From: Ascidiella aspersa | Taxonomy: Eukaryota | Direction of reading: 5' to 3' | Length of the DNA: 64,000 nt | NCBI GenBank assembly: GCA_963924565.1 | Contig: OZ004615.1 | Coordinates: 7,502,001-7,566,000, forward strand | Shown: positions 1 to 20,800 of the stretch, in pieces | Layout: every line of letters begins with the position of its first letter | Numbering within the stretch: position 1 is the first letter of the stretch | The notes under the pieces: model-generated | Database searches by the model: none | The model's input: the letters and a program-made list of their open reading frames with translations, nothing else | What the model was told of the DNA's origin: nothing | Translations under genes and position numbers: made by a program

Positions 1-3000
1 ACTCAAAAACAAGAAAATATTAAATCTGCTAAAGCGAGTCCAAAGACCACACAGGTAACCTCAGAAGAAAGTGTTACTAAATTAGCCTCAAAGCAAGTGA
101 CCGAGACTGAAACGGTACCGAAAGTGGAACCACAGGTTGATTCACTGTCACTTAAAACACACGAACAATCCGAGGTGGTTGTTGAACAGAGGATTGGAAT
201 GACAAAACGATCTCCGACCGCCAAGGAAATGACGACAGCCCTGGCTTCTCTAACCGACAATATGTCGAGAGACGAAAAAGAAGTGCCACCAAAACGTACT
301 CCCGTTATTCCCGGGGCAGAAAAGGTTACCGAAGAAGCTGTGCAGCCTAAAGACAGACGAGAGGCCAGTGTCGATGTTGAGGTTGATGACCTGCCTCCGA
401 AAGAGGTATCCCTCGATCAAAAGCAAACTACTAGAAAGGTGTCTGCGCAAACATCAACCACCGTGACCACTCAGGAAATTAAAACGACCAAACGTGTTTG
501 GAATCCAAAGACCCGGCAATTCGACGAGGTTGCAATCGAAAAGTCGACCAAAACAACTTCGGACACCAAACAGAAACCAAAGAGTGTCACAGAGATTAAG
601 GAAATCAAATCTGACGAATCACGTTTACAGGAATTACACGACGCTACAGCCTTAACGCAAACTGTAGACGAAGTTAGTGTGGAGACATCGTTCACTGACA
701 CTCCGTCTCAACCTAAAGAGTTGGAGAAGTCAAAATCGCAAATCGATATTAAGCATTCAACGCCAGAAGTAAAACTAGAACCGGAAACAAAGCATAATAT
801 TCACGTTGAAACGTCTAAACCGGTCAGTGTTTCAACTAAATCTGAAACAGAAACGGTGCCATCTGCTGAACCGAAACAAAAATCTGACGAAGAGAAGCCA
901 CGAATGACGTGGAATTCTAAAACGCGGCAATTCGAGGAGGTACTTTCCGTTGTTAAAGTTCCAACGTCGAAGGCCACCGCTCAGGAACCTGCCAAAGTAG
1001 ACATTCCAACGGTCGAGGAACCAAAACCAGCCGTGACCAAGCCGCATGCTGAACCAGAGACTGCATTCCAGAAGGTTCCGGTTGCGACCGAACCGCAAAC
1101 TGCTTTAACCGGGGACGAATATGTTCAGCCCGTGTTTCGGGATGTTAAAACCGGGAAGGTAGACAAACAGGACGTGGAAAAAATACCGATTAAGACGTCG
1201 GGCAAGTCTAAAGAATTAACACTGTTTTTAACTGACGCGTTAGTGGTTGATCAACCACAACAGGGAAAAGTTAAACAATCTGAACCCTCCCAAGCTCTTA
1301 AAGTTGCCGAAGAGCCGATTTATAAAAAGGATAGGGAGACGGTTGCAACTAGCATTGATGCACCTACTTCACCAGAGCAAACAATTCCAGCCGCTGTTTC
1401 CAAAAGCGTTAAAATTGGGGAAGTTGCAACTATTGAAGTAAAAGAAACTCATGAAAGGATATCTGGTGATGCTTTATCGCAAGAAGAAAAGAAAACCAAG
1501 AGGGTTTGGAATCCTAAAACGCGACGCTTCGATGAAGTTATAGTTGAAATCTCAACAACAACAAAAACTCAAGATTCTAAACCGAAAAAGACAGCAAAGC
1601 CTTCCCCAGCGAAAACCGAAGAAATAGCTCCAGAAACAACCAAAGCACCAAAAACTGATATTCAAGTAAAAGTGACCGAAATGCCAGAAACTGATACAAG
1701 TGTTCAGACTGAATTGGTATCGTCAACAAAACCTGGTGACGAGGAGATTATACATCCTATTACTTTGGGTGTAAAACCTACGAAAACAAAGGCCATTTAT
1801 AAAACATCCGCTGTGGAATCACTTACCGATGCAATGTCTATAAAGGGCATTCAACCGGAACCAGTTTCATTGCCAAGCGGTGTTGCTGTTACAGAAGATT
1901 TAGTTCAGCCAAAAGATAAAGATTCTGTTGATATTTCTGTCCCATATGAACCTACACCACCCGAGGAAATCCCGGTCGGTAAGTCCCGCGAAGACATTAA
2001 GATGACTGAAGAGGCTGTCGTCACTTCGGAAATTACTACCCAGAAGAAATCTGGCGCCATCGTTTCGCAGGAAGTCAAGAAAACCAAGAGGATTTGGAAT
2101 TCCAAAACTCGGCAGTTTGACGAGATTGAAATTGAAATTTCAAAGACTGTGGAAACCGCCGAAGTTAAACAACCACAAAAAGCGAAACCAAAGAAGGAAA
2201 AGAAGTCCCCAAGTGACACTGCCGCTTTGGATGTAGAACCACAGTTCGATGCGAAACCTGAAGATATCACGCAGCCTAAAATTGCAATTGATGTCGAGAT
2301 TTCATCAGTGCAAAGTGTTTCCGAGGAGGTTTCAACTAAAGTTGGTTCTGAAGAAATCATTCTCCCGGTACGTCAGCATGGCAAACAGGAAAAGTCAACG
2401 AAAACTCTGGACAAAACTTCCGCCATTAACTCTCTGACCGACGTAATGTTTGTGGAGAAAACCGAACCTAAACCGAAATTAGCCAAATCTCCAAGTAGTC
2501 CAACAGTGACCGAAGATACGGTTTTACCGAAGGATAGAGAGTCTATAGAGACTCCTGTTGACTATAAACCGACTCCACCCGAAGATATATCAGTAGCTGA
2601 GTCGCAGGCAGATGATGTTCAAGTTCCCGAGGATACGCAAATAACCAAAGATGTGACAATGCAGAAGCAACCTACTTCTGTTCTCACACAAGAAACCAAG
2701 AAAACCAAGAGGATTTGGAATCCAAAAACTCGACAGTTCGATGAGGTCAAAATTGAAATTTCAAAGACGTTGGAAACCATCGAAGTTGAACAATCAGAAG
2801 AAGCGAAATCTAAAACGAAAAAGAAGGGCCCAAGTGCTTCTGTGACTTTCGAAACCGAGCCTCAAGTCGATATCAAACCTGACGAAACAAAGACGCCAGA
2901 AATTGCAATAGATGTCGAGATTTCATCAGCGACCAGTGTTTCTGCGGTAGTTTCAACTGAATCTGGTAAGGAAGAAACTATTCGTCCAGTCCTTAAGGAT

Positions 3001-6000
3001 GGTAAATCGGAAAAGGCCACCAAAGCTGTTGATAAAACGTCGGCTATTGGCTCCCTCACCGACGTAATGTCTGTGGAGGAAATCGAACCGAAAAAGAAAT
3101 TGGCCAAATCACCAAGCTCTCCAACAGTGACTGAAAATACGGTTTTGCCAAAGGATAGAGCACCCGTTAATATTCCTACTGACTTGGAACCGACACCACC
3201 CGAGGATATATCAGTAGATAAGTCGCGGCCAGATGATGTTCACGTTACCGAGGAGACGCAAGTAACCAAACAAGTGTCAAACCAGAAGAAACCTACATCT
3301 GTTGTTACACAAGAAACCAAGAAAACCAAGTTAATTTGGAATCCGAAAACTCGACAGTTCGATGAGGTCGAAATTGAAATTCCAAAGACGTCGGAAACCA
3401 TCGAAGTTAAACAGCCACCAGAAACGAAATCTAAAAAGGAAAAGAAGGGCCCAAGTGCCTCTGTGACTTCAGAAACCGAGCCTCAAGTCGATATCAAACC
3501 TGAAGAAACAAAGACACCAGAAATTGCAATAGATGTCGAGATTTCCTCAGCGACCAGTGTTTCTGCGGTAGTTTCAACTGAATCTGGTAAGGAAGAAACT
3601 ATTCGTCCAGTCCTTAAGGATGGTAAATCGGAAAAGGCCACGAAAGCTGTTGATAAAACTTCTGCCATTGGCTCCCTTACCGACGTTATGTCTGTTGAGG
3701 AAATCCAACCGAAAAAGAAACTGACCAAATCACCAAGCGCTGTATCCGAAGACACGGTTTTGCCAATAGATAGAGCATCTGTTACCATTCCTACTGACTT
3801 TGAACCGACACCATCCGAGGATAAATCAGTAGCTAAATCACAGCCATATGATGTTCAAGTTACCGAGGAGACGCAAATAATCAAGGAAGTGACAATACAG
3901 AAGAAACCTACTTCTGTTGTTACACAAGAAACCAAGAAAACAAAGATGATTTGGAATCCTAAAACTCGTCAGTTTGATGAGGTTGAAATTGAAATTTCAA
4001 AGACCTCAGCAGCCACCGAAGATAAGAAACCACAAATAGATAAACCAAAGAAAGAAAAGAAAAGCCCTGATGTTCCCTTACTTTTAGAGACAGAGCCACA
4101 AGCTGATGCTCATACTAAAGAAACCATGGAACCCGAAATTGCAATAGATGTCGAGATTTCATCCGCGCCTAGCGTGTTTGCAACCGTATCAACTAAACCT
4201 GGTAAGGAGGAAATAATTCGCCCTGTGCTTAAGGACGGAAAACTGAAAAAGTCCTCCAAAGCTGTAGACAAAACTTCTGCTATTGGCTCCCTCGCTGACG
4301 TAATGGCTGTAGAGGAAATCGAGCCAAAACAGAAAGCAATTAAATCGCCCAGCGCCCCAATGGTGTCTGAAGACACGGTTTTGCCGAAAGATAAAGCGTC
4401 TATCGACACTGCTGCTGACTTCGAACCGACACCACCCGAGGATATATCAGTAGCTAAGTCGCAGGCAGATGATGTTCACATTACCGAGGAGACGCAAATA
4501 ACCAAGGAAGTGACAATGCAGAAGAAACCTATGTCTGTTGTTACACAAGAAACTAAGAAAACGAAGAGGATTTGGAATCCCAATACTAGACAGTTTGATG
4601 AGATTGAAATTGAAATTTCAAAGACCTCGGCAACCGCCGAAGTTAAGAAACCACAAGTAGATAAACAAAAGAAGGAAAAGAAGAGCCCTGATGTTCCCTT
4701 ACTTTTGAAGACCGAACCACAGGTTGATGCTAAATCTGAAGAAACCATGAAGCCGGAAGTTGCAATTGATGTTCAGATTTCTTCAGCGCAAAGTATTTCT
4801 GAGGCAGTTTCAACTGAATCCGGTAAAGAAGAAACTATTCATCCAGTCCTTAAGGATAGTAAATCAAAAAAGGCCACCAAAGCTGTTGATAAAACTTCTG
4901 CCATTGGCTCCCTTACCGACGTAATGTCTGTGGAGGAAACAAAGCCTGAACAGAAATTGACCAAGTTAAGCGCTACAACCGTTACCGAAGATACGGTTTT
5001 GCCAAAAGATAGAGCATCCGTTAACGTTCCTACTGACTTTGAACCAACTCCTCCAGAAGCAATATCAGTTGCTAAAGCACAGGCAGAAGTCGTTCAAGTT
5101 ACCGATGAGATGCAAATAATCAAGGAAGTGACAATGCAGAAGAAACCTACTTCTGTTATTACACAAGAAACTAAGAAAACCAAGATGATTTGGAATCCAA
5201 AAACTAGGCAGTTCGATGAAGTTGAAATTGAAATTTCAAAAACGTCAGAAACTATCGAAGTTGAAAAACCACAAGTAGCGAAATCGAAAAAGGAAAAGAA
5301 AGACACTGATATTCCGGTAATTTTAAAGACCGAACCGCAAGTTGTCGCCAGACCTGAAGATACCAAGAAACCCGAAATCACAATAGATGTCGAGATTTCG
5401 TCATCGCAAAGTGTATCTGAAGCAGTTTCAACAGAATCCGGTAAGGAAGAGACTATTCATCCAGTCATTAAGGAGGAACCGCGTAAATCCACCAAAGGAG
5501 ATGAAATCGTAAAACATAAACCAAAAGACAAAGGGGGAGCGATTTCGACCAACGCTTTATCGGTAACAAAACCTCAATCCGAGGAATTTGAATTAAAGCC
5601 ATCTACAAAGACTCCTATTGTTGACGAAGAACCAATACAATTGGAAAACAAAGATGCAGTCGAGGTTGGCATTTCAGTTCTTGTTACACCGGCATCTCCA
5701 ACCATTGCAGAGGTCAAAACGCCATCGGCGAACGAAAAAATCGAAAGCCTTTCGACAAAGCCAGACATTACAGCTGCTCCTGATTCTACCAAAGTCTTCA
5801 TTGAAACACCACATGTTCCCTCTACAGCTGACAAGAAGGTGGTCACGACTATCGATAAATCCGCAGTAAACGATCTTGTACAGGTTACAAAACCTTTGCC
5901 TGAAGAGAAAACAGCTGTTGTTGTGTCTACTGACGGAAGTGTGCTGACAAACGAAACTACAATCAGCAAAACAAGCCGTTCTGTCGTTACACAAAAAACA

Positions 6001-8866
6001 AAGAAGTCTAAACAGGTATGGAATCCCAAATCTCGCACATTTGACGAGGTGGTTTTGGAAGTTTCGTCCGAAACGTCTAAAGACGAAAAACAAATCCTTT
6101 CACTGGAAAAAGACGAAGCTAAATCGTCTCCCCCTCAGGTAAAGGAACTATCTGCCGCTCAAGCAAAACCTGACACCGTAGTTGTTGGCATAAAACCCCA
6201 AGAGGATAAAGCCTCACCCTCGCCAGCCTCTCTGTATACAGTTAAGAAAGACACGCCTTTAACTGGAACTGAAACGCGTCCTACTGTCCCTCAAGAGTTA
6301 GATGCAGATAGTACACACGACGTTGTATCTACAATAGTCACACAAACGTACTCAGATGACAAGACTCTTTCCAGCAAGGACATGCATCGGTCGACTGAGA
6401 TGGCATCAGTTACCAGCCAGGTTTCTGTTCATACAGATGCGGGTTCGGCGGTTTCGAAAACCGTCCTTAAAACCAAACGAGTGTGGAATCCAGTCGCTGG
6501 GAAGTTTTTCGAAATTACCATTGAGGAACCGGTGCAAAGCGAAGATCACGATGAGCTTGAAGCAGAGAAACAGTCGCCATTATTTGAGGAAACCTCGCTT
6601 CATGGGCTTCCGACGACAGAAATGCAACATGAAAGCAAAGAAGATACACAAAAAAGTTCAAAACTCATGACAGAGAAGCCGAAACGAAGGGTGTCTTTTA
6701 AAGAAGACTTGGTCAGTGAGGAGAGCGACGAACTAAAAGATCGTGACGTCACGGAATCGAAAATGGTAGAAAAATCCAAACAGCCAAAGCTACCGACCGC
6801 AGCCTTAGAACAAAAAGAAGTTCAAATTAAAACATCAATTCCTGGTGAACCAGATACCGCAGTTGCAAAGGGCCAATCGCGACTAGCGACGGAGGTTAAG
6901 GTTGCTGAAACCGCAACAGAGGAAATAGTCAAAGTTAAGGTACGTGAAGAGGAAGTGGCCGCCAAAGTAAAACCAGCGTTATCTGTCAAGGGTAAGACAA
7001 AAATCTTGGATTCCCTCACAGAAGTAATGACAAGCAAACCGGGCGATGATACGCCGAAAAAAATAACGGACATACCAGATGTTAAAGAGGAATCAGAAGA
7101 GAAAATTGAGCCAAAGGACAGGGCGTCTCTTGTGAGCGGCTCTAGCAGCGACGACGTAACACCGTTAAATGACGAGTTTGCTAAAACCTCTATTAAATCT
7201 CAATATGATGATGTTCAACGAACTGAAAAACCAAAGATGGTTTGGAATGCAAAGACAAGGCAATTCGATGAAGTCACCGTTAAGGTGAAAGCTGCTGAAA
7301 CTGAACCTGAGAAGACCAAGGTAAAAACATCCGGTCATGTTAAAAAGGCGACCGATGTCGACACGGCTGAAAAGGCTGTTGTAGAAACCAAGAAAGAGGT
7401 TAAAGTGGCGAAACAGCAAATAAAGGATGTGAGCCCTGATACTACTGAATCAATTATTCCATCTGATCGGAAAAATAAGGAGAGTAAAGCCGAAGTCGCT
7501 GTTACACAATTTGAAGAAGAAAGTGTTGTTTTAACGAAAAAGGAGAGCGTTCGAGAGAAAGAAACCCAACCAGATGAACTTATTGCCCCTGAAACCCTTG
7601 ATTCGACGACCGTCAGCAAATCCCAGTCCGCTGAAGTTAAAATTTCTAGCGAAAAGTCAACAGTCGAAAGTGGCCAACATGTGAAAACCACAACAAAGAA
7701 AACTAAAATGACCTGGAACCCGAAAACTCGTCGCTTTGACGAAACAACTGTGGAAGAAGAGGTTGAAATCACTCTTCCGGTTGACAAAGATGTAAGTTTG
7801 AAACCCTCAGTTTTCACAGAAGCTACTCAGCCTGATGATATTAAAGTTATGACTTCTATTGAGGACATTAAAACTAAGCCCAAGGTGGTTGAACGTAAGA
7901 AAGGTATTGTGGAAAGAACGAAATCGCCTATTGACGACGACGAAGTGTTTGAGGAACGAGTTCGCACCAAAACAGAAAAGAGCGAGGAAAAAGTAAAGCG
8001 CGTTTGGAATCCCAAAACGAGCCAATTCGATGAAGTAAAAGAGAAAGGCTTTGACATAACCGAGTCGCGAGACCAATCCAAAAAAGACTCCAAGAAAAAA
8101 TCGATTGATTCTGACGATTTACTGGAGATGGACGTTCGTGACATTCAACAACCAGTCGTTACAACCACAATAAGCGATATGAAGCAAGGAGGTTTTGACG
8201 GTTTAGGTGACAGCTTTGCCTTCAGCAGCCATTTTAGCAGCACCAGTGAGAGCTTCGTGACCACATCATCGCAGGACGGTGTCAAGCGGACTGAGACAGT
8301 CAAGAAATCGACCCGGGTCTGGAACCCACGAACTGGCAAGTTCGAGGAAACTACATCAGAAGAGCGGCATTACGAAACTGAGGACCGTCGTCAGCAGACG
8401 CCGCAAGTAACCGAGAGGGAGCGTGAAATTCAAATCGATATAGAATCTGCGCCTAGAATTTTAAAGCCCGCCGATGTTGATCGTAGCCAGCCGCATGTAA
8501 CCGATGCAGAGCGCGACATTCCAATCGATGTCGAATCTTCGCATAAGGCCTCTATTGCGCCTGACGTTTCGCAGCCTCCTCTGTTCTTGAGAAACATCCA
8601 AGGCGAGACTGTGGAAGAAGGCTCCATGGTAACATTTAGCTGCAAGATAAGCGGTTCTCCATTGCCGTCCGTGCAATGGTTCGTAAAGGGAATCGAGATC
8701 GTGGCGCCCTGCGACGGTTTCACGCTGGTGTCGGATGACGACACCGGCGTATGCAACCTCGTGGTGCAAAATGCCAGTCTCAGTCAGGACCAGAGCAAAG
8801 TGGAATGCCGCATCGCCAACAATTGCGGCTCGGCTGATTGTAGCGCTCTGCTCCGAGTTCGAAAGA
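1..8866 (+). CDS. Giant titin exon (5' truncated): low-complexity T/E/K/V/S/P-rich repeats plus one C-terminal Ig
   Basis: Frame 1 open from base 1; Ig PPLFLRNIQ..FSCKISGSPLPSVQWF..ECRIANNCG..LRV; donor GTGAGT at 8867 (phase 1). Confidence 0.9.
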
Positions 8867-11800
8867 GTGAGTTTAACCGCGACATCCATCAATTCAAACT
8901 TCGTAACATATGCCGAAAACATATCCAAAAATGTCATAAATTTGAAATCACTAAGGCATATAATTTTTATCCAACTGATTTTTTAAGTAAAATGTCAAAA
9001 AATGCCCAGAAAATAAGTTAATACTATACATATTAAAACTAACTATTTTGTATTCGATTAGTGATTAGACAATACGAAAATTATCCGCTTCCATCTATCA
9101 CTTCATTATTATATTGGTCACAAAAACACAGTCATCTGGAAATAACCATCACTTTATTAAAACTTTGTCATTAACTCCTCAAATTTATACAGAAAAATCG
9201 GCCACGAAAAAAGAAGCGGCAAAGCACTTAGAGGTGGAAAAATTAAAGGCACCTGAGATTGTTAAGCCGCTTCAAAATCAAACAGTCGTCCAAAACACCA
9301 AAGTCGTTCTCGCGTGCGAAATAAACGGCCACCCCGCGCCGCGGGTTACGTGGTTGCACAACGGCCAGCCAATGAGAGGCCGCCACGTCAGGGCCGGTTC
9401 CTCGTCGATCCAATCGGACGAGCCGAGGACTGATTCAGTCATGAAGTTGAATCTGACTCTTGGGCGAGTGACTGACAAGCAAGCCGGCGTTTTTGAATGC
9501 CGGGCCAGCAACGAGCTGGGTACAGTTTCTACAAGCGCGACTCTAGTGGTGGTGGCTGAAAATACCGCTCTTCCGCCAGGTGGCGTTGTCACATCATGAG
9601 TGTTCCATTACCTAAGCTCATGCACGCAGCCATCGCCACTACGTTAGAAATAGAGAAATATAAGAGATTTGTACCGGTGTTGTTTACTGAAAAATTACAA
9701 GATTTATTTTCACTCATACTACATCATGTGTAACTTCACCTCACTGGTAAAGAATATCCAACTTTAATTTGTTCTCTTTGTCGATTCAGGGCTCTTCGAA
9801 TCACCTTTGCAACCAGAGGAGACTGAACAAGTTGAAGAAGGTAAGACGCACAAAAAACATAATCATTTGCAATCATTTTTAGGTATACACGAGTTTGTAG
9901 TTTTACCGCTGCACGTAGGCACATTTTGTTTACGGGTTTAAGGCTGCCCCATTTGCACCTGTGGTTGATACTTTTGCTATAAACAAAATCTGCCTACTTG
10001 CAAAACATTAAAGTTATAAAAACATGTCGCCATTTCATCACCTTTTCTATTCGCTTTGCGTTCTTATTGTTTCCTTTGCTTTGACTACTCTTTTTGCGAC
10101 GCTTTTCGCTTCTTTGATATCAGTTCGGTCAAGAGCAAGAGCAATTTTACAGGGTAAGTGGGGTATCCTTTCCTTTCTTTCTATCTTTGTAAACCTAGTT
10201 GATCTACGCTAGTTATTGTTAACGGTTAGGATGTTGGTCAAATGTGTTTTACCAGTGACAGTAGGTACTTGTTGTTTGTTTACTGATATAAGAACGCATA
10301 CCAAGTTGTTTAACGTTCGGCAGGTTTTTCGATGCAACAGTATGATTCCGATAATCAGTTGCACGTAAGAAGCTCAATGACTGGCAAAGAATTCACAATA
10401 CAAAGGTCGGAGGTTAGCCGCCTGGTCGGCAACTACATTACACAGTCGGATATTGACCCAAGTCTCACGGATATGCCAATTCTGTCGAGGTGAGTTTCCT
10501 TAAAAATTTCGCCTTTAATAATCCCCTTGTGTGAAAATTGAAACCAAACAAAAAGTATACGTTCGGTAAACATTAATATTATAATATGATGTATGGCATA
10601 GTTTGACACTTTATGATTTTTGGGACACTTTTATTTTTTATTTTTTCGTTGAATGATTTAATCATAATGCATCACGCGAATTTTCAGATTAATGAACAAA
10701 AAATGAGTAATTTTAAAGGATTTCCTTACAACCCGTTTTCTACAAAGTAGTAGTTTCTTATTGAAAATCTTTTCAGCGTTTCATTAAACCTTATTGAGAT
10801 TTGACTTACAGTATCCAAAAAATGTTCGGTGTCGATTGCGTTTTACAAGTCTTGATTGTTTTACAGAACGAAGCCAATAACAGAGCTGGACGACGACCTG
10901 ATAAGACCGTCCTTTATACAAAAGCCGAAACTGCAGTCGGTTCTTACCGAAGCACACGTGAGGTTCGATTGCCGATTTGTGGCCTCGCCTCGACCCAAAG
11001 TAATCTGGCTTCATTCCGACGCTGAAATCAAGGTAAGGGGTTTAAAACTAGTCTTAAACATCGGTTATAATAAATGTTGTATGCGGCTTATGTTTTGGAT
11101 CGCTTTTGAATAGTTGAAAATGGGCAATTTATTAATCGGTTATTAAGGTCCCCATAAATCGCGAATAATATTTAATAAATTTAAAAAATATGGCTGCTGA
11201 ATCTCTGGGGTCAAAACGCCAATTTTAGGCTCATATTTGATTTCAAATTTAAAAATTAAATAAATACAAACGCCTAAGACGTTGTAAATTTTTAAGACTT
11301 TCTAATCTATCGTACAATTTAAATATTGTCTAAGCACCCACTAAAACGAATACATCTAAATTCAGTGGCCCATATTTACAAAAAACAAAACTGACTAAAA
11401 TTTTAATTCTTTTTGCAGGCGACCAATACCCGTTACAAAAGCACCCTGGAGCGAGATCTATTCTCCTACCAAGCCTTCCTTGACATTGACGGGTGCCAGT
11501 CGGACGACGCTGGCATCTACAAAGTGGTGGTGCGCAACCGTGAGGGGGAGGCCAGTGCCTCTGTCCCCCTGCTGGTAACTGACAGGGCGCGGTCCCAGGC
11601 GGACCGGGAAAGTCCCGTGGGTGCGAGTGAGCCAAGGCCAGTGTTGAAGCTTAATCTGGACTCAACTACTGAAAGCGACTCCCCTGCTAAAACAGTTTCG
11701 GCCACTGGGATCGCGATTACACCAAGACAGCCTTACTCGGCGCGGAAGTATTATGAGCGGAAAGAACGCGAAAGCAGGTCTAACAACGTTACGGATCTGA

Positions 11801-14800
11801 ACCGAACCAGCAGCTCGTCGCTTTTACGATCCGGAGACATGAACCGATCGCTCTCGTCGCTTTCATCGCTCTCGTCGGCGTCGACGGGCGGGTCGCCGCC
11901 GCGCGAGAAGATCTCGCGACAGGGCAGCGACCCCGAAGCGTTCGAGTTCGAATCAGCGCCGAGAGCGAGCCGAGTCCAGCAAACGGCCGGATACGTCCGG
12001 ACACGGGAATCGAACCAGGGACTCGCGATCGGCATTGTGCGTCAGGCCGTTTCGGACCAGCAGTCGGTCACCACCGGCTCCAACTCGCACAGCAACACCA
12101 GACATTCGGCGTGCGACAGCAGCGAGTCGTCGCGGACTTTGCGCGAATCCTGCGGCGGCAATTCAAGGACCAAAAGCCAGTGCCGCAAAATGCCGCCTGT
12201 CGTGGTCGAACCTCTGCCGGAAAACGTGCGTCTAAACGCCGGGGAGCGTCTCCGGCTTTCTTGCGTGGTCAGCGGGCGGCCACGACCAAAAGTCCTCTGG
12301 ATGCGCGACGCCGAAGACCTCCAGAGCGCTCCCGGGTACTCTTTCGAAGAGGCAGAACACGCGTCGGCCGGCTGGAGCTACCTCCTGTGTCTCGGCGAGG
12401 CTCTTCCGGAACACTCGGGAACCTACACTGTGTCCGCGTTTAACCTCTACGGCGACGTGGCGAGCCACAGCCAAATTTTGGTGGTACAAAAAGGTAGAAA
12501 ACTGTTAATATTTTTGAACATTTTTTGCTTGTTGTGAACCTACAGCTACTGCGTGATGATAAGTTTGCATGTCGGTTGATTGTACTTTTATTTGCTTCAC
12601 ATTATATGAGGGTCATAAAGTTAGTTTTCCGTCAAAAATGTCAGGCTATTACCTATTTATTAACAGTAACGCCTAAAATGGACGCAATAAATGCGTTTTC
12701 AGTTGATTAGCTTTTTTCCAGACAATAGCATACATACTGTTTAAAATAAGACATGTTCTTAGGTTAATAAATGTTATTTCATAACTTTGGGAACATATAA
12801 TAATGTTGGCATGATATGGTTTGCTTTGATTTAAAACAAGAGCATCGTGTTAAGGTTTGAACAGTTAGTCATTTCAAGTTTGAAAAACCGATCTGCTGCA
12901 GTGCATTCTCACACCACTTTAACAAACACACTATAGAGTCGCGTTAAAAGTGTTCATCTTATCCGTTTTGCTACGCTTGCTATCTATGGGCGTTTACTTA
13001 TAAGCATGGATTGTATCTGCACCCGGACTTTTCCTATTCTCACCTGTTTGCATGCGGCCTGCCGGTTCTGCAACGCAAGTCGTCGACCAGGTACGTGTGA
13101 ATGCATGTGTACTTTCGCTTGCATAAAGCACGCGCGAAGTGCTTTTCGCTGTGTGGATGAGAATTAAAATTTCATGAGTCCGCCGCCGCGTCTTGAGCAC
13201 GCCCCCATGAATTCTTAAGGGTTTATTGGTATAAAGAAACGGCACGGGTGCCAGATTGATAACAGCAGTCTGCCATAAACGTTCGCTAAGAAGCTTTTTA
13301 ACTGTATTTGAAAGTTGTAAATTTGCTTTTGTAAAACGTTCAAGGGCCGGTTTAATCGTAAAGTTGGCGAAAAATCGCTTAAAGAAAGCGTAGATCAATA
13401 CGACTTTTAACATATTAAATACGATTATGAATTTTCAAAATTTTTTGACGGTTTTGTTTGGTTTTCGAAGTGTGCATTAAAAATGGGTCTCGTATTCTTT
13501 CTTTTTGATATGTTACTTTGACATTTCGCGGTACACGCGCTTAACTGTGCTTTCTTTATTTAGTTTCAGAGCACAATTGCACTTTCGACCTCGGCGAACG
13601 GGACGAATGTCAAGTGGCATCGATCGAAGAAAGCCAAAGCAAACAAACGGCGGCCGAAACAGCAACAGCAAAAGAAGCAGAAGCAAGTCAATTGGAAGCA
13701 ACTTGCAGCGAGGTCGAAGCGACGGGCGGCCACGTCAACGCTGCTGACCTAGAAAGTTTTCTTGGCGGCGATGCTGCGACGGACAATAAAGAAAGCGCAC
13801 AACTAAGGACGACTGACGTCGATGTTGTCAGTTGCACCGAGTGCGTAGATACAGAGGCGCGCGAATACGACATGGGAAACGGCATTAGGAAGGCTTTTCG
13901 TGGCGAGCGACAACGGGAAACAGCAGATGTTTGCGGCATGGAAAATTTGAAAACATTGAACTACAATGTCGTGATTAATAACAACGAACATGGAGAAATT
14001 AAAAAGAAGGGTTTCGACTTCGGTAGCGATGCTGAAAATGGACAAGAGGCAGATGTTGACGAATTCTCTCTCGATTCCGCATTCGAAACTGGGTTTTGCG
14101 AGGCAGCGGTCGACAGCCACGAAGAAGATAGCAAGTCCGACGTAGACACTACTCAGACTAAAGTTGAACGAGCGTCGGACTTCGAAGACAGAGAAAAGAC
14201 TTCTAATCGTGTTTCCGGTGATGCTGTTCGGGAAATTAGCTTAGAGTCGACGAAGGCAACAGTAACAGGATGTGATCAACACAGTATCAAAGACAATAGC
14301 CAACGGAAAAATCCTGAAGCCGCTATTTCTCCACAAGAAGTCGAAAATGGAGACACATCCGACAAAGCGACGGTAACAGAGTCGAACGAAGCGAATGTCA
14401 AAAATGACGTCACCGAGCCCCTCCGCTTCGTGAAGGAACTTTCCCCGGTCACGGTGATGGAGGGCAACACCGTCGAGCTCGAGTGCCGTACCTCGGGTCC
14501 AGTGGACAAGGTCACTTGGTACAAGAACGCCGAGGAGATTTTCGACGGGCGCGATTGCTACTTTCTGGGTTCGAAAGACGGCTCACATAGGCTCACCATT
14601 CTCGACTCGAGGTGAGATAAACCTTTCGTAACATTGTCTCGTATACAAGGGGCCTCCAAACGTCGCTGAACCAATAGAATTAACATGCACCTTATGGCGT
14701 AGCACAGTTTGCACGGGATGTAGAATTTTAATGAAATTTAAAAGGGACCTTGTTTCAATTGTCCCCACGGTGTTAATAACTCTGCGCAGAAGAAATACAG

Positions 14801-17800
14801 CAATTGGCAATTGGCCAAGTACGGTCGATACTAGTAGGAAGTAGAACAAAGATATATAAAATCGCACACAAAAGTTGACTTAAACAGATTAGTTTAGTAA
14901 CTGAGGCTATCTTAATGATGAACTTATTTAATAGTTTTGTTTACTGTCACAAAATCCAAGCCTAATAATCAACGTATTTATTCCAGATGGTCAGAGGACG
15001 AGGGGGTGTTCAGCTGCCAGGCCGAGAACGTTTCCGACCTAGTCTGCAGCACCACCGAAGTTTACGTCGAGCTACCCAAGGAAAAGTTGCTTCAGATCCT
15101 CAACCTGCGGGAACAAGAGGAGACAACGTCCTCTTCCGATAAGAAAAAAACCTCCACCATCAAAGCGCTGGAAAGCGGTGAAAAAAGCTCAGGGGAGACT
15201 GTTTACTTTTACCCGGACTCCAGTGTCGCTTGCCTTGAGTTTCAGCAGGACTTTGACGAAGACGAAGATGATTACTTGGAGCGTCGCGAGCTCTCGCCCA
15301 TATTGGAAGAGGACGAGGAAAACATGTCGGTGATGTCCACATCCACGAGGACACTGAGCAGTGCTCCTCTTCAACCGTCCATCAGGGTGCGGCGCGCGTC
15401 CTTCGATTCACTCCTGTCATTCGAGGCACACGAAAAACTGGCGTCATGCGAACTCTTAAATTCCGCTGCTCTGGCGCCTGAAGATCCTCCACAAGATGCT
15501 GGGTCGTCAGAGGATTCGGATGAGGGAAGCGACTCGCAGGAGAGAGCTTGCAACTCCAGAGCATCCAGCGCCTGTCGCCCGCTCTTATTTGGCTCCGACA
15601 CCGAATCCCTTGTTGGTTCCAGACCTGGTTCGGCCAACAGACTGCGAGCCGGATTCTCCAGAGTCGGAAGCAGGGGCGACAGCTTTGACCTCGAGATGTG
15701 CCCCGAAGTCGAAGAGGTGGATGCCGACGTCGAAGATGACGTCACATTCGACACGGAAAATGGTGACGTCACGAAAAATGGCAATGCCTATATAGACGAC
15801 AAACATTCAGTTTTCCAAACGCTTGTTCCACGTATACAAACGGACGATGACGTGATGACTGACGAGTCACAATATGACGTCAGTAACGAGAGTCGATACA
15901 GTAATGATGTCACAGAAGAAGACAAAAATACCGAAAACTTTGATGTAATGCAAAACGAAACTCAGTGCTTTGACAAAAAGCAAGATTTGGAAAATAAATG
16001 CGAGGCTACAAATCAAGAATCAAAAAACGAGTATGACGAAAAAGAAAACGATTTTGAAGATTATGATGACGTCGGGTCGGACACTGTCTGCAGCAGCTCG
16101 TGCGATTCGGAGCTGAACTTCGACGGCGAAGAATCTGACTTTCAAGAAGATGGTCACTGTGAAGGCGGCGCAAAACCTAGACTATTAGCAATGGATGCTC
16201 TTGCCCTTAACACGGCAAAGACTTGCGACGATTTGCAGTCAACCAGCGGTCTGGAAGTCAACGAAGACGACTTCCTAGGTTACAGACTGGTCTGTCGCCA
16301 GCGCGAGGACTCGGTGTTCGACTTGCAATCGCTGCATGAGCGTCTCACCAAAAGCGCCAGGGCCCTTCCGCAAAGCGAGCAGGACACCTCTTCTTCGGGC
16401 ACCATTGGCGACAATGCAACTGCAGCAAGCTTTGAAGGCGGACGATTTTCAAATGTCGTTGATTTAAATGGAAACGCAAGGGAGCACGTTGTCGTTGTTT
16501 CGACAAAACACGACAATTTGCCGGTCGTGATTTACCCAGCGGACAATAACAACAAACAGTTCGATATCACCTCCGCAGCTGACACCGCTGATTTCGAGAT
16601 CGCAAACGACAACCTCAATTTGACCAAGTTAATTCGGCTAGGCGAGGCAGCCTTTGACGTCATATCCAGCGTCGACGCCGATTTCCACTCGTGCGTGTCG
16701 TCCAACACCGCGACGCCCACTTGCGGATTTCGCACAGACGAATGCCCCTCCGAGGCCGGGTACGAGACACCGCCCGAAGACGGCTCTAAATGGATCACAA
16801 GTGGGCTTAAGTACTTCGAAACCAGTCAGGGCGTCACTTCCGACGATAAAGACTCTGTGTATGAAGAGTGCTCGACGCCGGTGAACTCACCCGGCCAGTC
16901 GGATCTGACTTCAGTCACCGCTTCTGGTTTCGTGACCCCGCCCAAGTTCTACTACGTCATACCGCCCAAGTTTCTCGGCAAGAAGTCGGTGCAAATCTCG
17001 GTGGTGCGCGGCGGCACGGCCATCTTGGCCTGTTCCGTGATCGCCCATCCCGAGGCCAAAGTGGCCTGGTATAAGGACGGTAGGCTGATGGACATTTACA
17101 ACCGCATTTCGCAGCATATTAGCAACGAGGCGCCACAGGAGTGCCTGGAAGAGCACGGTGACCTCCTCTCATGGAGTCCTCCCTGGCTTCCTGTGCAGAG
17201 AGATTGCGACATCGGCTGCCCGCGTCAGCTCGACGTCCATTACGTACTGAAGATAAAGGATGTTTTGCTCAAGGACGAAGGCGTTTATATTTGCAAGGCC
17301 TGGAACGCGGCCGGGGTTGCCACGCGGATCATAAGACTCGATGTGAAATAAAAACGGAGCCAGTCTAAACACTTGGAAACTTGCATGCTGACTTTTTATT
17401 TTAAAAAATTTATTATTGCGTTTTGTGTGTTTTGTAAAAATATCATTGTGATTCCTTAATATATATATATTGGGACTGTTTTTTTACTATTAAAATTGAC
17501 CACAAAGCATGATATCTTGTTTAGGCCCAGTGTGGAGTGCAATATCAGATTGATAAACCGTTAATAACTTATAATGCTGTATTTCATTTCCTTGCCCAGA
17601 TTCGCTCAGTAGCAGTTTGGACGCGGGTTCGGTTACTTTAGAGGAAAGCGGTTTCTACCAGCATTTCGAGCAGAAGTCAGCGACATTCAGCGAAAGTGAC
17701 CAGTCTCACAACGTTCTGTTCAGCCAGGCCGCCATGACCATGAAAACACAGCGCTCATCGCTGCGCGCCAAACCCATCTTTCTGCGACCTCTATGTGACG

Positions 17801-20800
17801 TCACTGTGCAGGGCGGCCAATCGGCGACGCTCTCGGCCGAAGTCCGTGGCATTCCGAACCCTCTGATAACCTGGTTCCACAACGGCCACGTAATCCGAAG
17901 CGACGAAAACTACCGCTACGTGAAACAGGGAGAAAAGCACCAGCTGGTGGTTCCCCGAGCGAGCGTGAACGATCAGGGCATCATCGGGTGCAAAGCGACA
18001 AATGTGTTGGGCGAATCCACCAGCACTGCTAAGTTAACAGTGCTCGAGTCCATTTTAGAAGGAATCTCGTCGGACTCGGAGCTCAGCGTTGCGCTGTTCG
18101 ACGATTCCTCAATGAACTTAACGGTTGTGGACAGTGTTGAAAGATCTAGAGACTTAACTGCCAGCGAGCTGAACGTGACAGGCGACAGTAAAGTTTCCTT
18201 TGCTGGCTCGTTGTTGATGCAGAACAAAACTTACTCCGAGGAGTTTAGCTTCTCCAGCTTGCCACTCCCGGAACAAAGCGACGGCGTTATTTCCGAGATG
18301 GACGCGTACGGCAATATTTCCGATCAGACCTTGTCCAGTCAACGCGAATCGTTTATCAGCCAAGTTGACGCAAGAACTGATCAAACAGCGAAAAGGTCGA
18401 TTCTAAAGAAGAAGAAGCGCGTCCACATAGAAAAGCGCAGCTTCGGTTCAATGACCGAGAATCTAGTGGAAGAGTCGGCATCTTTGGTCCAGCAAAGCTG
18501 GACCGAGGAAGTGCGGAAAATCATCCGAGAGGAAATGGAGCTGAGAGACGAAAGGAGCCGAGAACTGCTGATAAAAGAATCGAAACAAGAGGATAACACT
18601 CATGCCGATGGAGTTGAATCACTTCCGGTCGCCCAACCGCCGAAATTTGCCAAGGCCATTTCCGACTGTGAAGTATTGGCGGGCGAAACTGCCCACTTTG
18701 TCTACATCCTCGACGCCAGCGCACCGGCGAAGGTGACCTGGCTACGTAACGGTGCCGAAATCGCGCTTTCCCGTGACCCTGCAAACACAACCGACGACGT
18801 GTTTTCGGCGACCGACGGAAACCTGGGGATCATATGCGACGATGAAGCCGGGTGCCTGGTGATCAGTGAAACCGGCCCGAAACACAGCGGGGTCTACGCT
18901 TGCTTCGCTTCCAACGAACATGGCAGCACAAAATGCAGCGGCCGGCTTGTTGTACACGGCGCTCGGAAGCAGCCAAACCTTTCCACGCGAGACGCAGGGA
19001 CATACATAGCAGAGGAGAGCAACGCACAGACTCAAGTGTCAACCCTAGTGGACCAGGAGTCTCAAACCCGAGAGAGTCGCTTGCTGATTGAGGAAGATCA
19101 AATTGAGGTCGCGTTTAAGCAGCTTGAATACGCCGAAAAGTCGCGAGCCGTTTCCGAAGTTATCATACCCTCTTCCTCTCCTCCGCCGCCGAGAGATCCT
19201 CCAACTGATAGTGATCTCAGGAGGAGGAGGAGGAAAAAGAAGAAGAGGCGTGATGGCGACTCGGTCGAACAGAACGTGGGAAGACTGGACGACTTCGAGA
19301 CCGGTGAAGGTTTGAAATGGAGCACCGCTTTAGCGAAGGCAGATTGTCATTGGCATGACTCACCTTGTATAGAAAAAGTAAATTACTCAGCTTTAACGAG
19401 TAAGATCACAGAGGTCTTGGCTCAAATTGCAATGCATTATAACCCAGCAAGAGACAGCACAGCACAGCACAAAATGAGTATAGTTTGTTATGAAAGCACT
19501 TTACCACCATAACCTATACTTGCACTTTACCACCATAACCTATACGTTACAGCACTGATGCCTGACTGTGAAATTAACAACATTCAGGTCTCCAAACAAA
19601 AGGTTAGCTTTACGGCTTAAGCATGTTACCACTTTCTAAGTTAACACAACTCACTTTTATTTCAGTACAATGGAATTGTGTCTAGAGCACTGATTGCTTT
19701 GGCGGTAGTGGCTAGCCTAAAATGGCACCACGTTAAGGTTAGATTTTACCACGCGACGCGCACATATAGGTTACTATAGTTTCGGCTGTTGACTGCACGA
19801 ACCGCACCGGCACACTTCTGATACTTCAGGTGTTGTCACATGTTATAAGGCACCATTTGCACCTTTCTGTGATGCGAGAAAAGCCTACTTTGAGAACTGC
19901 ACTGATGCACCGCTTCGCATTGATACTGTAATTGTTTGATATAAACCGCGTTTCGTTTAAAAGCCCTTCTAACCATCGATAAATTGCTTTACAGAGGAAA
20001 AGCTTCAGCCGCCTGCATTCACTCGCAAGCTGACTGTGACCAAAGCCCGACCGGGCCAAAAGGTTTGATCTCACATTGCATATGCTTATATTTTTGCTAA
20101 AGTTATCCAATGGTTTTTTTGTACCACATCCTGATTACATTATGTTATATTACATTTGGCTATTGGTAAAAACATATAATCTTATAGAAGTATGTCGTAA
20201 TATAAAGATAAAACAATGCGCTTCATTTTTTTGTTATCCTAGATCAAAATAGAGACAGCTTGTTAAATGTTTTGAAATCAAAATGTTTTGTTTTTTAGGC
20301 CAAGCTTTCGTGCACACTGACTGGTTCATCCCCGGTCCAAGTGCAATGGTCACGTGACGATACACCGCTAGAGCATGACGAAACTCGCTACGTCATGAGC
20401 ACCAACGAAGCGGAACCGTTCCTTGAAGTGCGCGAAGTTTCGTTCAGGTAAGCTGCGATAAGTTTCGGCTACAATTTAAAGTAATTTAACTCGACAAGTT
20501 AAAATTCATAATTCCAATTCGTACAAAGAAAGCCTAAAAATTAATAAATGTTTTCTGTACAAAAATGTAGCAAATTTAAATTTATTTTGATGTATTTAGC
20601 GACGCTGGAGAATACACAGTGACCGCTACAAATGTGGCCGGCAGCGCCTCCTGCACAGCGTCTCTAGTGGTCGAAGGTCGGTGATGACGAAATCGACAGT
20701 GACGTCACAGCCACGAGCACGCGTTTTGATTTCTATGTTCGGTCCCAGGAATGCTGCCTTGCGTTGCCGCTTGCTGTTTTACAAAGGGCCTTCGACCTTT

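What the first reader, a model, noticed from the sequence alone, without database searches (positions are those of the whole stretch)
10324..17352. Novex-3-like alternative terminal branch in an apparently non-vertebrate titin
Seen: a chain of 4 Ig domains and long acidic linkers ends in TAA right after a complete Ig, overlapped by AATAAA, while titin exons resume at 17600 in phase 1. Full-length titin must therefore skip 13570-17351, using a phase-1 donor such as 9579, 9840, 10153 or 12493. Known: vertebrate novex-3 is a terminal exon just before N2B. From memory, its first Ig resembles IRPSFIQKPKLQSVL..FDCRFVASPRP. Inference: the truncated isoform predates vertebrates and is split over several exons here.
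Basis: partly seen in the sequence, partly recalled or inferred. Interest (0 to 1): 0.75.

Follow-up and report, generated by a model that had tools for sequence, protein, structure and literature searches.

The report
Terminal side branch in sea-squirt titin
Inside a sea squirt's titin gene lies a conserved five-exon stretch that codes for four immunoglobulin-type domains and then stops, so it can give a short muscle protein: either a cut-short titin like the vertebrate novex-3 form, or a small protein of its own.

Summary
On the + strand, five exons (10324-10489, 10867-11032, 11419-12493, 13564-14611, 14987-17351) encode about 1,600 residues. They hold four I-set Ig domains, one Ser/Thr/Arg-rich linker and two acidic linkers. 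The chain ends in TAA one residue after the last Ig, and AATAAA lies on the stop. RNA-like contigs of one public run join the last three exons, using acceptor 13564, not 13570. Ten homologues, among them Ciona and Phallusia proteins annotated only as 'uncharacterized', end at the same place. The next exon (17600-19309) is an internal phase-1 coding exon, also in a second tunicate locus. Full-length titin must therefore splice across the branch.

Two things are not shown. The first is how the branch is entered. It may be cis-spliced from the titin exons just upstream, giving a novex-3/kettin-like truncated titin (my preferred reading, about 0.5). Or it may have its own start, as public annotation treats it (about 0.3). 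The second is any sequence kinship to vertebrate exon 48; no vertebrate exon 48 sequence could be fetched. No poly(A) ends and no splice into 17600 were seen in the sparse RNA.

The scan had noted the same stretch once before under another reading (s1-791115). Verdict: real, conserved, and a new member of a known kind. Interest is moderate.

The parts
9193..9579 (+). Upstream titin Ig exon, phase 1 in and out. It is a possible last or second-last common exon.
   Evidence: I-set hit. Acceptor and donor were read.
9790..9840 (+). Tiny 51-nt exon (G-LFESPLQPEETEQVEE-G), phase 1 in and out, with no ATG. It is a candidate last common exon.
   Evidence: It is conserved in L002 at about 1255-1304 as GLFESPLESDGQETLE. 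Vertebrate exon 47 before novex-3 is 45-57 bp (PMC5852582 Table 1). That is a parallel in position only.
10124..10187 (+). Possible 30-nt micro-exon (10124-10153, phase 1-1), followed by a conserved donor and intron start (10153-10187).
   Evidence: blastn gives 80% over 35 nt to L002 1783-1817. It is the only non-coding block conserved between the two loci. The sequence upstream of the donor is not conserved as protein. The acceptor is inferred only.
10324..10489 (+). Branch exon 1: a non-Ig peptide, the most conserved piece. In-frame ATG at 10332. In-frame TAA at 10311-10313 in the preceding intron.
   Evidence: 81% aa identity to L002 and 80% to Phallusia P0172. Phases were read by hand (1 in, 2 out). 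The 5' border is inferred, with no RNA laid there.
10867..11032 (+). Branch exon 2: N-terminal half of Ig-a (phase 2 in, 0 out).
   Evidence: I-set profile positions 1-42. 73% to L002 and 77% to P0172. P0172 reads straight across both junctions.
11419..12493 (+). Branch exon 3: C-terminal half of Ig-a, a 203-aa Ser/Thr/Arg-rich linker, and Ig-b. The donor is phase 1.
   Evidence: Pfam. The joint 12493|GT..AG|13564 is in a contig of run X2. It is collinear with P0172 and P0173.
13564..14611 (+). Branch exon 4: a 286-aa acidic linker (with conserved MGNGIRK, ATG at 13872) and the N-terminal half of Ig-c.
   Evidence: X2 joints at both ends. Pfam. P0172 residues 476-808. This Ig is absent from L002.
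14987..17351 (+). Terminal exon: C-terminal half of Ig-c, a 630-aa acidic linker with conserved short motifs, Ig-d with a conserved insert of about 40 aa, and TAA at 17349-17351.
   Evidence: X2 contig of 2,565 nt covers 14409-14609 joined to 14985-17348, with no joint inside. The 10 homologues end 1-7 residues after the same Ig.
17347..17352 (+). AATAAA overlapping the stop codon.
   Evidence: L002 has AATAAA at 8399, 4 nt before its stop at 8408-8410, and a second one at 8530.
17388..17435 (+). U-rich then GU-rich stretch (TTTTGTGT type), a likely downstream element of the poly(A) site.
   Evidence: Read. A similar TTTTGTGT follows the L002 stop. The function is inferred. X2 has no depth at 17349-17458, and X5 has none at 17419-17615.
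17600..19309 (+). Next titin exon (unique - Ig - unique - Ig - unique), phase 1 in and out. It is internal and coding from its first base.
   Evidence: I-set x2. 41% to L002 8728-10308. Codons upstream of the first Met are conserved with synonymous changes, and the exon starts with the same ATTC. Donor read.

Best explanation
The stretch is an alternative terminal module of the sea-squirt titin transcription unit. A transcript that uses acceptor 10324 runs through five exons and ends at a poly(A) site just after the stop at 17351. It encodes a tail of about 1,600 residues. The tail has a highly conserved 55-residue peptide, Ig-a, a Ser/Thr/Arg-rich linker, Ig-b, an acidic linker, Ig-c, a long acidic linker studded with conserved short motifs, and a strongly conserved last Ig with an insert.

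A transcript that splices from a phase-1 donor (9579, 9840, 10153 or 12493) to 17600 instead goes on to the A-band exons and gives full-length titin.

I think it most likely that the module is entered by cis-splicing from the titin exons just upstream. The product would then be a truncated titin that keeps the N-terminal and spring parts and swaps the rest for this tail. That works like vertebrate novex-3 and insect kettin.

Shown: the exons, three of the splice sites, the conserved stop, and the need to skip.
Inferred: the cis link to titin, the use of the poly(A) site, and the choice of skipping donor.
A binding role for the conserved first peptide, the linker motifs and the last Ig is guessed from their conservation only.
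For: 1. The reading frame is open across the RNA-supported joints and closes only at 17349.

2. Run X2 has spliced contigs 12493>13564 and 14611>14987, running on to 17348.

3. The exhaustive HMMER search gave 212 hits. Only 7 of the 150 listed align beyond the Ig domains, and all 7 end 5-8 residues before their own C-terminus. In total 11 of 11 sequences, the window included, stop 1-7 residues after the last Ig.

4. Phallusia P0172 (1,513 aa) is collinear with all five exons.

5. L002, another tunicate, has the same order: tiny exon, conserved donor, branch, stop with AATAAA, then 318 nt to a phase-1 acceptor.

6. Exon 17600 is coding upstream of its first Met in both loci. There is no in-frame ATG after the stop at 17572-17574. 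It therefore needs an upstream coding exon.

7. For the cis link: in L002 the first branch exon has no in-frame ATG. Yet the codons for LHVRSS upstream of its first Met are kept through five synonymous codon changes. The 29 codons of contiguous DNA upstream hold no Met. The tiny conserved exon upstream also has no ATG in either locus. Translation there must therefore come from further upstream, where the titin exons lie.

8. All junction phases fit.

9. The module is single-copy in the genome. A-band Fn3/Ig exons follow in the same window.
Against: - No read or contig was seen that joins a titin exon to 10324. The one read-laying run covered only 12100-18000.
- No splice into 17600 was seen. 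The only X2 contig there runs unspliced from 17459 across the acceptor.
- No poly(A) ends or loose ends were reported near 17360-17440. X5 gave only 22 reads.
- P0172 starts with Met five residues before the first junction. The window has an ATG 8 nt after the acceptor, with an in-frame stop just upstream in the intron. Both fit a protein of its own.
- Ciona annotation keeps the unit apart from titin.
- Phase-1 compatibility is the default for titin-type Ig exons, so it is weak evidence.
- DNA-like runs show odd joints inside exons 3, 4 and 5. One has a net loss of 73 nt. If these are real alleles, they would break the frame.
Confidence: 0.5

Rival explanations
1. The unit is a gene of its own, nested on the same strand in a titin intron. 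Its mRNA would start at about 10300-10330, either by spliced-leader trans-splicing at the 10324 acceptor (or one nearby) or from an internal promoter. Translation would begin at ATG 10332 and give a free four-Ig protein of about 1,603 residues (roughly 180 kDa). Titin pre-mRNA would simply splice across it. This could also co-exist with the cis-spliced form.
For: - P0172 (Phallusia, 1,513 aa) starts with Met at the first branch exon and ends at the last Ig.
- Ciona names the pieces 'uncharacterized protein LOC113474550', and the Phallusia entry points to LOC100184276. Neither is called titin.
- The window has ATG 10332 8 nt after the acceptor, an in-frame TAA at 10311-10313, and a TATAAG about 40 nt upstream of the ATG.
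- About half of expressed Ciona genes are trans-spliced (PMC1488885 abstract).
- An earlier agent reports the host's spliced leader in this genome (s1-806516, not checked by me).
Against: - L002 has no in-frame ATG before codons that are clearly under protein constraint.
- No conserved promoter block lies before the exon; only the donor at 10153 is conserved.
- P0172's first five residues could be the tail of the preceding tiny exon, with the ORF cut back to its first Met. Public gene models often break giant genes.
- No spliced-leader read was seen, and none could be sought.
Confidence: 0.3
2. Gene boundary: titin is split here into two genes. The upstream gene (Z-disc/spring part) would always end at 17351. 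A separate downstream gene (A-band part) would start at 17600, for instance as the second gene of an operon resolved by trans-splicing.
For: - The gap between the stop and the next acceptor is very short: 249 nt here and 318 nt in L002.
- Ciona operons have short or no intercistronic sequence (PMC1488885 abstract; PMC2760879 abstract in the listing).
- No splice into 17600 was seen, and the X2 contig runs from 17459 through it.
Against: Exon 17600 is conserved as protein, with synonymous changes, for more than 40 codons upstream of its first Met in both loci. It has no in-frame ATG there. It therefore cannot be a first coding exon.
Confidence: 0.07
3. An internal start inside the branch gives a still shorter product. 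Transcripts would begin in the 'intron' 12900-13563, read through acceptor 13564, and be translated from ATG 13872 (or from the other first reader's Cys-rich exon, ATG 13006 to donor 13090). The result would be a two-Ig protein.
For: - The raw RNA run X5 has its highest depth at 13282-13675, on the + strand. Four reads cover 13440 and four cover 13610, so they run unspliced across 13564.
- ATG 13872 opens the motif MGNGIRK, which Phallusia shares.
- ATG 13006 to donor 13090 is phase 1 and would fit 13564 (read by hand).
Against: - These are only a handful of reads and could be pre-mRNA. X2 shows intron depth everywhere.
- The Cys-rich ORF has no match in L002.
- P0172 runs from Ig-b straight into exon 4.
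Confidence: 0.08

Closest known systems
Vertebrate titin novex-3 isoform (TTN exon 48)
   Same: Both are a stop-and-poly(A)-bearing coding unit inside the I-band part of the titin gene, on the coding strand. Both encode Ig domains spaced by long insertion sequences and end with an Ig. Both are preceded by a tiny exon (45-57 bp in vertebrates, 51 bp here) and a conserved element in the intron before the unit. Both are followed by a large Ig-unique-Ig exon (N2B in vertebrates). Full-length titin skips it. Sources: PMC5852582 passages and Table 1; PMC13649281 passages.
   Different: - Here there are five exons and about 4.8 kb of coding sequence with 4 Ig (3 in L002). Vertebrates have one exon of 6.1-8.0 kb with 6 Ig.
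- The distance to the next exon is only 249-318 nt here, against several kb.
- A giant disordered spring exon lies upstream of it here.
- No sequence kinship was tested, because no vertebrate exon 48 sequence could be fetched.
- The link to titin's 5' exons is not shown.
- Obscurin binding is unknown.
Kettin / short Sallimus isoforms of Drosophila
   Same: A short product of a titin-like gene that ends early and does not reach the thick filament. The novex-3 papers themselves name it as a parallel (PMC6098106 discussion; PMC13649281 discussion).
   Different: It is an arthropod gene with a different domain make-up. How kettin's 3' end is made is recalled, not checked here. No sequence comparison was done.
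Ciona intestinalis LOC113474550 (XP_026691854.1, 504 aa; a 1,296-aa partial model) and Phallusia mammillata 'Uncharacterized protein LOC100184276' (1,513 aa)
   Same: These are direct orthologues of this branch. Over the last 229 residues they are 59% and 70% identical to the window. They are collinear with the window's exons and have the same C-terminus.
   Different: They are annotated as uncharacterized stand-alone proteins. Nothing in the names links them to titin.

Membership tests
Titin novex-3 (exon 48) isoform | A coding unit with its own stop codon and poly(A) signal inside the titin gene, on the same strand, skipped by full-length titin. | tested here: met
   TAA at 17349-17351 with AATAAA at 17347-17352. 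The stop position is kept in 11 of 11 sequences. The next exon is internal and phase 1. A-band exons follow. Actual use of the poly(A) site was not observed.
Titin novex-3 (exon 48) isoform | The mRNA shares titin's 5' exons, so the product has a common N-terminus with full-length titin. | tested here: inconclusive
   No reads were laid on 9000-12100. L002 lacks a start codon of its own, which favours a cis link. P0172 starts with Met at the first branch exon, which favours a stand-alone product.
Titin novex-3 (exon 48) isoform | Position between the proximal I-band exons and the N2B exon, after a tiny last common exon. | tested here: inconclusive
   The order here is tiny 51-nt exon, branch, then an Ig-unique-Ig-unique exon. 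The vertebrate order is exon 47 - 48 - 49. The equivalence of these exons rests on position and size only. A giant spring exon lies upstream here.
Titin novex-3 (exon 48) isoform | Sequence orthology of the Ig domains and insertions to I18-I23 and is19-is23. | not testable with these tools
   No vertebrate exon 48 protein came back from any search. In one search only 7 of the 150 listed hits align beyond the Ig domains. I looked up names for 30 of the 150 (these 7 among them); only one of the 7 bears a name, and it is Ciona. The other 23 are hemicentin, obscurin/unc-89 and other Ig proteins, plus one bird titin fragment without the novex-3 region. In one search, 7 of 39 hits are of the tunicate group, 27 are OBSL1, 1 is DSCAM-like and 4 are unnamed.
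Titin novex-3 (exon 48) isoform | One large exon (6-8 kb) with six Ig domains. | tested here: not met
   Here there are five exons, about 4.8 kb of coding sequence and four Ig. L002 has three Ig.
Titin novex-3 (exon 48) isoform | The C-terminal region binds obscurin. | not testable with these tools
   This needs a binding assay. It is also disputed in vertebrates (PMC13649281 discussion).
Stand-alone nested gene (as annotated in Ciona and Phallusia) | Its own start codon in the first exon, conserved among species. | tested here: inconclusive
   The window has ATG 10332 and P0172 starts with Met. L002 has no in-frame ATG upstream of conserved coding codons.
Stand-alone nested gene (as annotated in Ciona and Phallusia) | Its own 5' end (cap or spliced leader) at the first exon. 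| not tested
No 5'-end data were at hand.

The most novel reading that the evidence does not exclude
The short, early-ending titin isoform is ancestral to tunicates plus vertebrates. On this reading the tiny exon, the branch and the following Ig-unique-Ig exon are the true counterparts of vertebrate exons 47, 48 (novex-3) and 49 (N2B). The branch would then be entered both by cis-splicing, giving a truncated titin, and by spliced-leader trans-splicing at the same acceptor, giving a free 180-kDa tail. One locus would thus yield three products from one pre-mRNA.
Probability: 0.2. Interest if true: 0.75.

Novelty: new member of a known kind. Interest (0 to 1): 0.55.

Why it matters
The novex-3 papers call it a long-standing puzzle why vertebrates keep such a large exon that the main titins do not use (PMC6098106 discussion). 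They describe novex-3 as conserved 'among vertebrates' only.

A conserved, stop-ending Ig/insertion branch at the matching place in sea-squirt titin would push the short isoform back to the common ancestor with tunicates. It would also make the question testable in Ciona and Phallusia, where muscle genes are easy to knock out and image.

Even if the unit is a gene of its own, it gives a name and a setting to proteins now filed as 'uncharacterized'. It also points to three strongly constrained parts as likely docking sites: the first 55-residue peptide, the linker motifs, and the last Ig with its insert.

Tried and rejected
- Word-based protein search with the terminal exon found nothing; its word and length limits explain that. 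The exhaustive search then found the homologues.
- A word search with P0172 residues 1-130 found only P0172 itself, in the 832-2,647 aa range. It therefore gave no view of how other species begin the protein.
- PDB sequence searches with Ig-b and Ig-d gave only generic titin, Robo, RPTP and obscurin Ig matches.
- The Atlas search with P0172 gave only generic muscle Ig clusters: MYLK, palladin, SPEG, myotilin and titin-like.
- The bird 'TITIN, partial' P0029 has no novex-3 region and was dropped.
- A hidden intron inside Ig-d (GT at 17081, AG at 17228) is rejected. It would be 148 nt, the X2 contig is continuous there, and the insert is conserved in 11 of 11 sequences.
- A donor at the Val codon before the stop is rejected. 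It would be phase 0, while 17600 is phase 1 and the two nearby acceptors are phase 2.
- A retrocopy that would show the mRNA's ends: none, since the module is single-copy.
- A bacterial origin of the odd shared piece 15139-15255: no E. coli match.
- Papers: no paper holds both 'novex-3' and 'Ciona'. The searches gave no report of a short titin isoform in tunicates.
- Hanashima 2012 on Ciona connectin and the Kellermayer 2017 review are not held. A description there cannot be excluded.
- Supplements are closed. The Supplementary Discussion and Figs S9-S10 of PMC6098106, on novex-3 conservation and evolution, may bear on the claim, and I could not see them.

Full report
WHAT IS THERE. The window is a stretch of a 308.6-Mb genome (contig C9). 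It carries a titin-type gene on the + strand. There is a giant disordered exon (ORF 97-9021, ending in an Ig), then Ig exons, and further on Fn3/Ig A-band exons (48668-52567). The closest proteins are from the ascidians Phallusia and Ciona, so the animal is a sea squirt, as an earlier agent also wrote.

Between 10324 and 17351 I read five exons:
- 10324-10489 (phase 1 in, 2 out)
- 10867-11032 (2 in, 0 out)
- 11419-12493 (0 in, 1 out)
- 13564-14611 (1 in, 2 out)
- 14987-17351

Pfam finds four I-set domains, two of them split by introns. Of the three linkers, the first (203 aa) is Ser/Thr/Arg-rich. The other two (286 and 630 aa) are acidic. The frame closes at TAA 17349-17351, one residue after the last Ig, and AATAAA (17347-17352) lies on the stop. 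U-rich and GU-rich runs follow at 17388-17435. One border needs correcting (13564, not 13570). The 'remembered' novex-3 peptide is in fact the window's own Ig-a.

RNA. One search for runs gave three contig-only runs of unknown kind and one raw RNA run of the same species label. I laid all four on 12100-18000 (the only lay allowed).

X1 and X3 have depth above 100 in most bins and above 60 in all, exons and introns alike, and look like DNA. X2 has depth 5-18 on exons and 0.7-4 on introns, and it alone shows GT..AG joints. I take it for RNA, which is an inference.

X2 joins 12493 to 13564 and 14611 to 14987. One 2,565-nt contig runs from 14409 through the joint to 17348 with no other joint. X2 has no depth at 17349-17458. 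A further contig starts at 17459 and crosses the 17600 acceptor unspliced. No contig or loose end shows a splice into 17600.

The raw RNA run X5 gave only 22 reads, all in the orientation of + strand RNA for a usual stranded library. It has depth on the terminal exon up to the bin 17222-17418, none at 17419-17615, and some on 17616-18000. No starts, ends, joints or loose ends reached the reporting threshold.

So the last three exons are shown to be spliced together in RNA. The 3' end and the skipping are neither shown nor contradicted.

RELATIVES. The exhaustive HMMER search with the terminal exon gave 212 hits at E <= 0.001. Seven of the 150 listed (687-1,291 aa) align well beyond the Ig, and each ends 5-8 residues after the match. 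The rest match Ig domains only.

I looked up names for 30 of the 150, the seven among them. Only one of the seven bears a name: Ciona XP_026691854.1, 'uncharacterized protein LOC113474550'. The other 23 are hemicentins, obscurin/unc-89, unnamed Ig proteins, and one bird titin fragment that lacks the novex-3 region.

A region search with P0007 added three relatives: Phallusia mammillata 'Uncharacterized protein LOC100184276' (P0172, 1,513 aa), a 1,296-aa partial Ciona model (P0173), and two more ORFs. The other named hits were 27 OBSL1 proteins and one DSCAM-like protein.

P0172 is collinear with all five window exons, at 80, 77, 45, 29, 42 and 53% identity piece by piece. It reads straight across each junction.

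In the 11-row alignment, the last 229 residues are 42-70% identical to the window. The insert in the last Ig is present in all rows. Every sequence stops 1-7 unconserved residues after the last strand.

The conserved short motifs in the disordered part include LSPILEE-acidic, S-DSL-SFEA-EK, DS-FDL-SLH, DF-SC-S, GY-TPPE and GYQTPPK-YYVIPPKF. The module is single-copy in this genome.

It is collinear with window 9790-19315.

In order, L002 holds:
- the tiny exon;
- a donor whose first 35 intron bases are 80% identical, the only conserved non-coding block;
- branch exon 1 (81% aa identity) and exon 2 (73%);
- exon 3 (35%);
- an unalignable acidic exon without Ig-c;
- the terminal exon, with TGA and an AATAAA 4 nt before it;
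- then, 318 nt later, a phase-1 acceptor followed by the same ATTC and the orthologue of exon 17600 (41%).

WHY SKIPPING IS NEEDED. Exon 17600 has no in-frame ATG before its first Met (after the stop at 17572-17574). Yet the 40-odd codons before that Met are conserved between the two loci, with synonymous changes. It is therefore translated from an upstream exon in phase 1. The exon just upstream ends in a stop. Only a splice from 12493, 10153, 9840 or 9579 (all phase 1) can feed it. This also argues against a plain gene boundary or an operon.

HOW THE BRANCH IS ENTERED. This is the open point.

For a cis link to titin: in L002 the first branch exon has no ATG. The six codons for LHVRSS upstream of its first Met are nevertheless kept through five synonymous codon changes. 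The contiguous DNA upstream has no Met for 29 codons. The conserved tiny exon also has no ATG in either locus. All phases fit.

For a protein of its own: P0172 begins with Met five residues before the first junction. The window has ATG 10332 only 8 nt after the acceptor, with TAA just upstream in the intron. Ciona annotates the unit apart from titin. About half of Ciona genes are trans-spliced (PMC1488885 abstract).

P0172's first five residues could equally be the end of the preceding exon, in an ORF trimmed to its first Met. I put the cis-spliced truncated titin at about 0.5, the stand-alone gene at about 0.3, and note that both could occur from the same acceptor.

COMPARISON WITH NOVEX-3. 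I saw passages and Table 1 of PMC5852582 and passages of PMC13649281. According to these, exon 48 is 6.1-8.0 kb and encodes over 2,000 residues with six Ig (I18-I23) and long insertions. It ends with an Ig and brings its own stop and poly(A) signal. It follows a 45-57 bp exon 47 and a conserved element in the intron, and it precedes the N2B exon 49.

The sea-squirt branch works the same way on paper and sits in a similar order of exons. But it is split into five exons, has four Ig (three in L002), and lies only 249 nt before the next exon. A giant spring exon lies upstream of it.

I therefore do not file it as a novex-3 orthologue. The functional likeness, which also holds for kettin, stands or falls with the cis link.

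AGAINST, AND LOOSE ENDS. DNA-like runs show joints inside exons 3, 4 and 5. One has a net loss of 73 nt at 14014/14091, and the sides are only 29-30 nt long. X2 carries the reference form at all of them. These may be alleles or graph artefacts.

All three contig runs hold a contig that shares only 15139-15255 with the window and runs into unlike sequence. Its source was not found.

X5 reads run unspliced from the intron into exon 4. That could be pre-mRNA or an internal start.

LITERATURE. No held paper has both 'novex-3' and 'Ciona'. The novex-3 papers I saw speak of conservation among vertebrates and of kettin as a parallel. The 2025 paper on titin evolution does not contain the word novex. 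Two likely sources are not held, and supplements are closed.

VERDICT. This is a real, conserved, expressed terminal module inside sea-squirt titin. The mechanism is plausible but half shown, and homology to novex-3 is untested. It is a new member of a known kind (early-ending products of titin-type genes). Interest is 0.55.

Noticed in passing
window 10153-10187; L002 1783-1817: The donor after 10153 and the first 34 intron bases (GTRAGT, a G run, then a pyrimidine run) are 80% identical between two tunicates. Their other non-coding DNA does not align, and the sequence upstream of the donor is not conserved as protein. This may be a splicing control element at the branch point between the short and long products.
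   Followed up: partly
window 10324-10489: The 55-residue non-Ig peptide of the first branch exon is the most conserved piece of the whole region: 80-81% identity, against 35-45% for neighbouring exons. No family or function is known. It is a likely docking site.
   Followed up: partly
window 17080-17230 (inside Ig-d): The last Ig carries an insert of about 40 residues between its two halves. The insert is present in 11 of 11 sequences, with nearly fixed flanks (RISQH before it, DIGC..QLDVHY after it).
   Followed up: partly
window 12888-13675: The raw RNA run X5 has its highest depth in the intron before 13564, on the + strand. Its reads cross the acceptor unspliced. This is either pre-mRNA or an internal start. 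The first in-frame ATG after it (13872) opens a motif shared with Phallusia.
   Followed up: partly
window 15139-15255: In runs X1, X2 and X3 a contig shares only this piece of the acidic linker and continues into unlike sequence on both sides, at depths far above the exon's in X2. It is not E. coli, and the piece is single-copy in the genome. The source is unknown.
   Followed up: partly
window 12162-12368, 14014-14091, 16908-17294: DNA-like runs X1 and X3 show joints that would remove 204, 73 (net) and up to 385 bases from coding exons. The matching sides are only 29-30 bases long. The RNA-like run has the reference form. These are possible structural alleles or assembly-graph artefacts.
   Followed up: no
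window 17459-18000: The only X2 contig over the 17600 acceptor is unspliced, and X2 has no depth at 17349-17458. The TA microsatellite at about 17454-17470 varies in run X3.
   Followed up: no
L002 4130-6350: The second tunicate lacks the third Ig (Ig-c) altogether. Its fourth exon is an unalignable acidic stretch, so the number of Ig domains in the branch varies among tunicates.
   Followed up: partly
window 10012-10153: In the frame that would join 10153 to 10324 there is an ATG at 10024, followed by a strongly hydrophobic 43-residue stretch. It is not conserved in L002 and is probably just T-rich non-coding sequence.
   Followed up: partly
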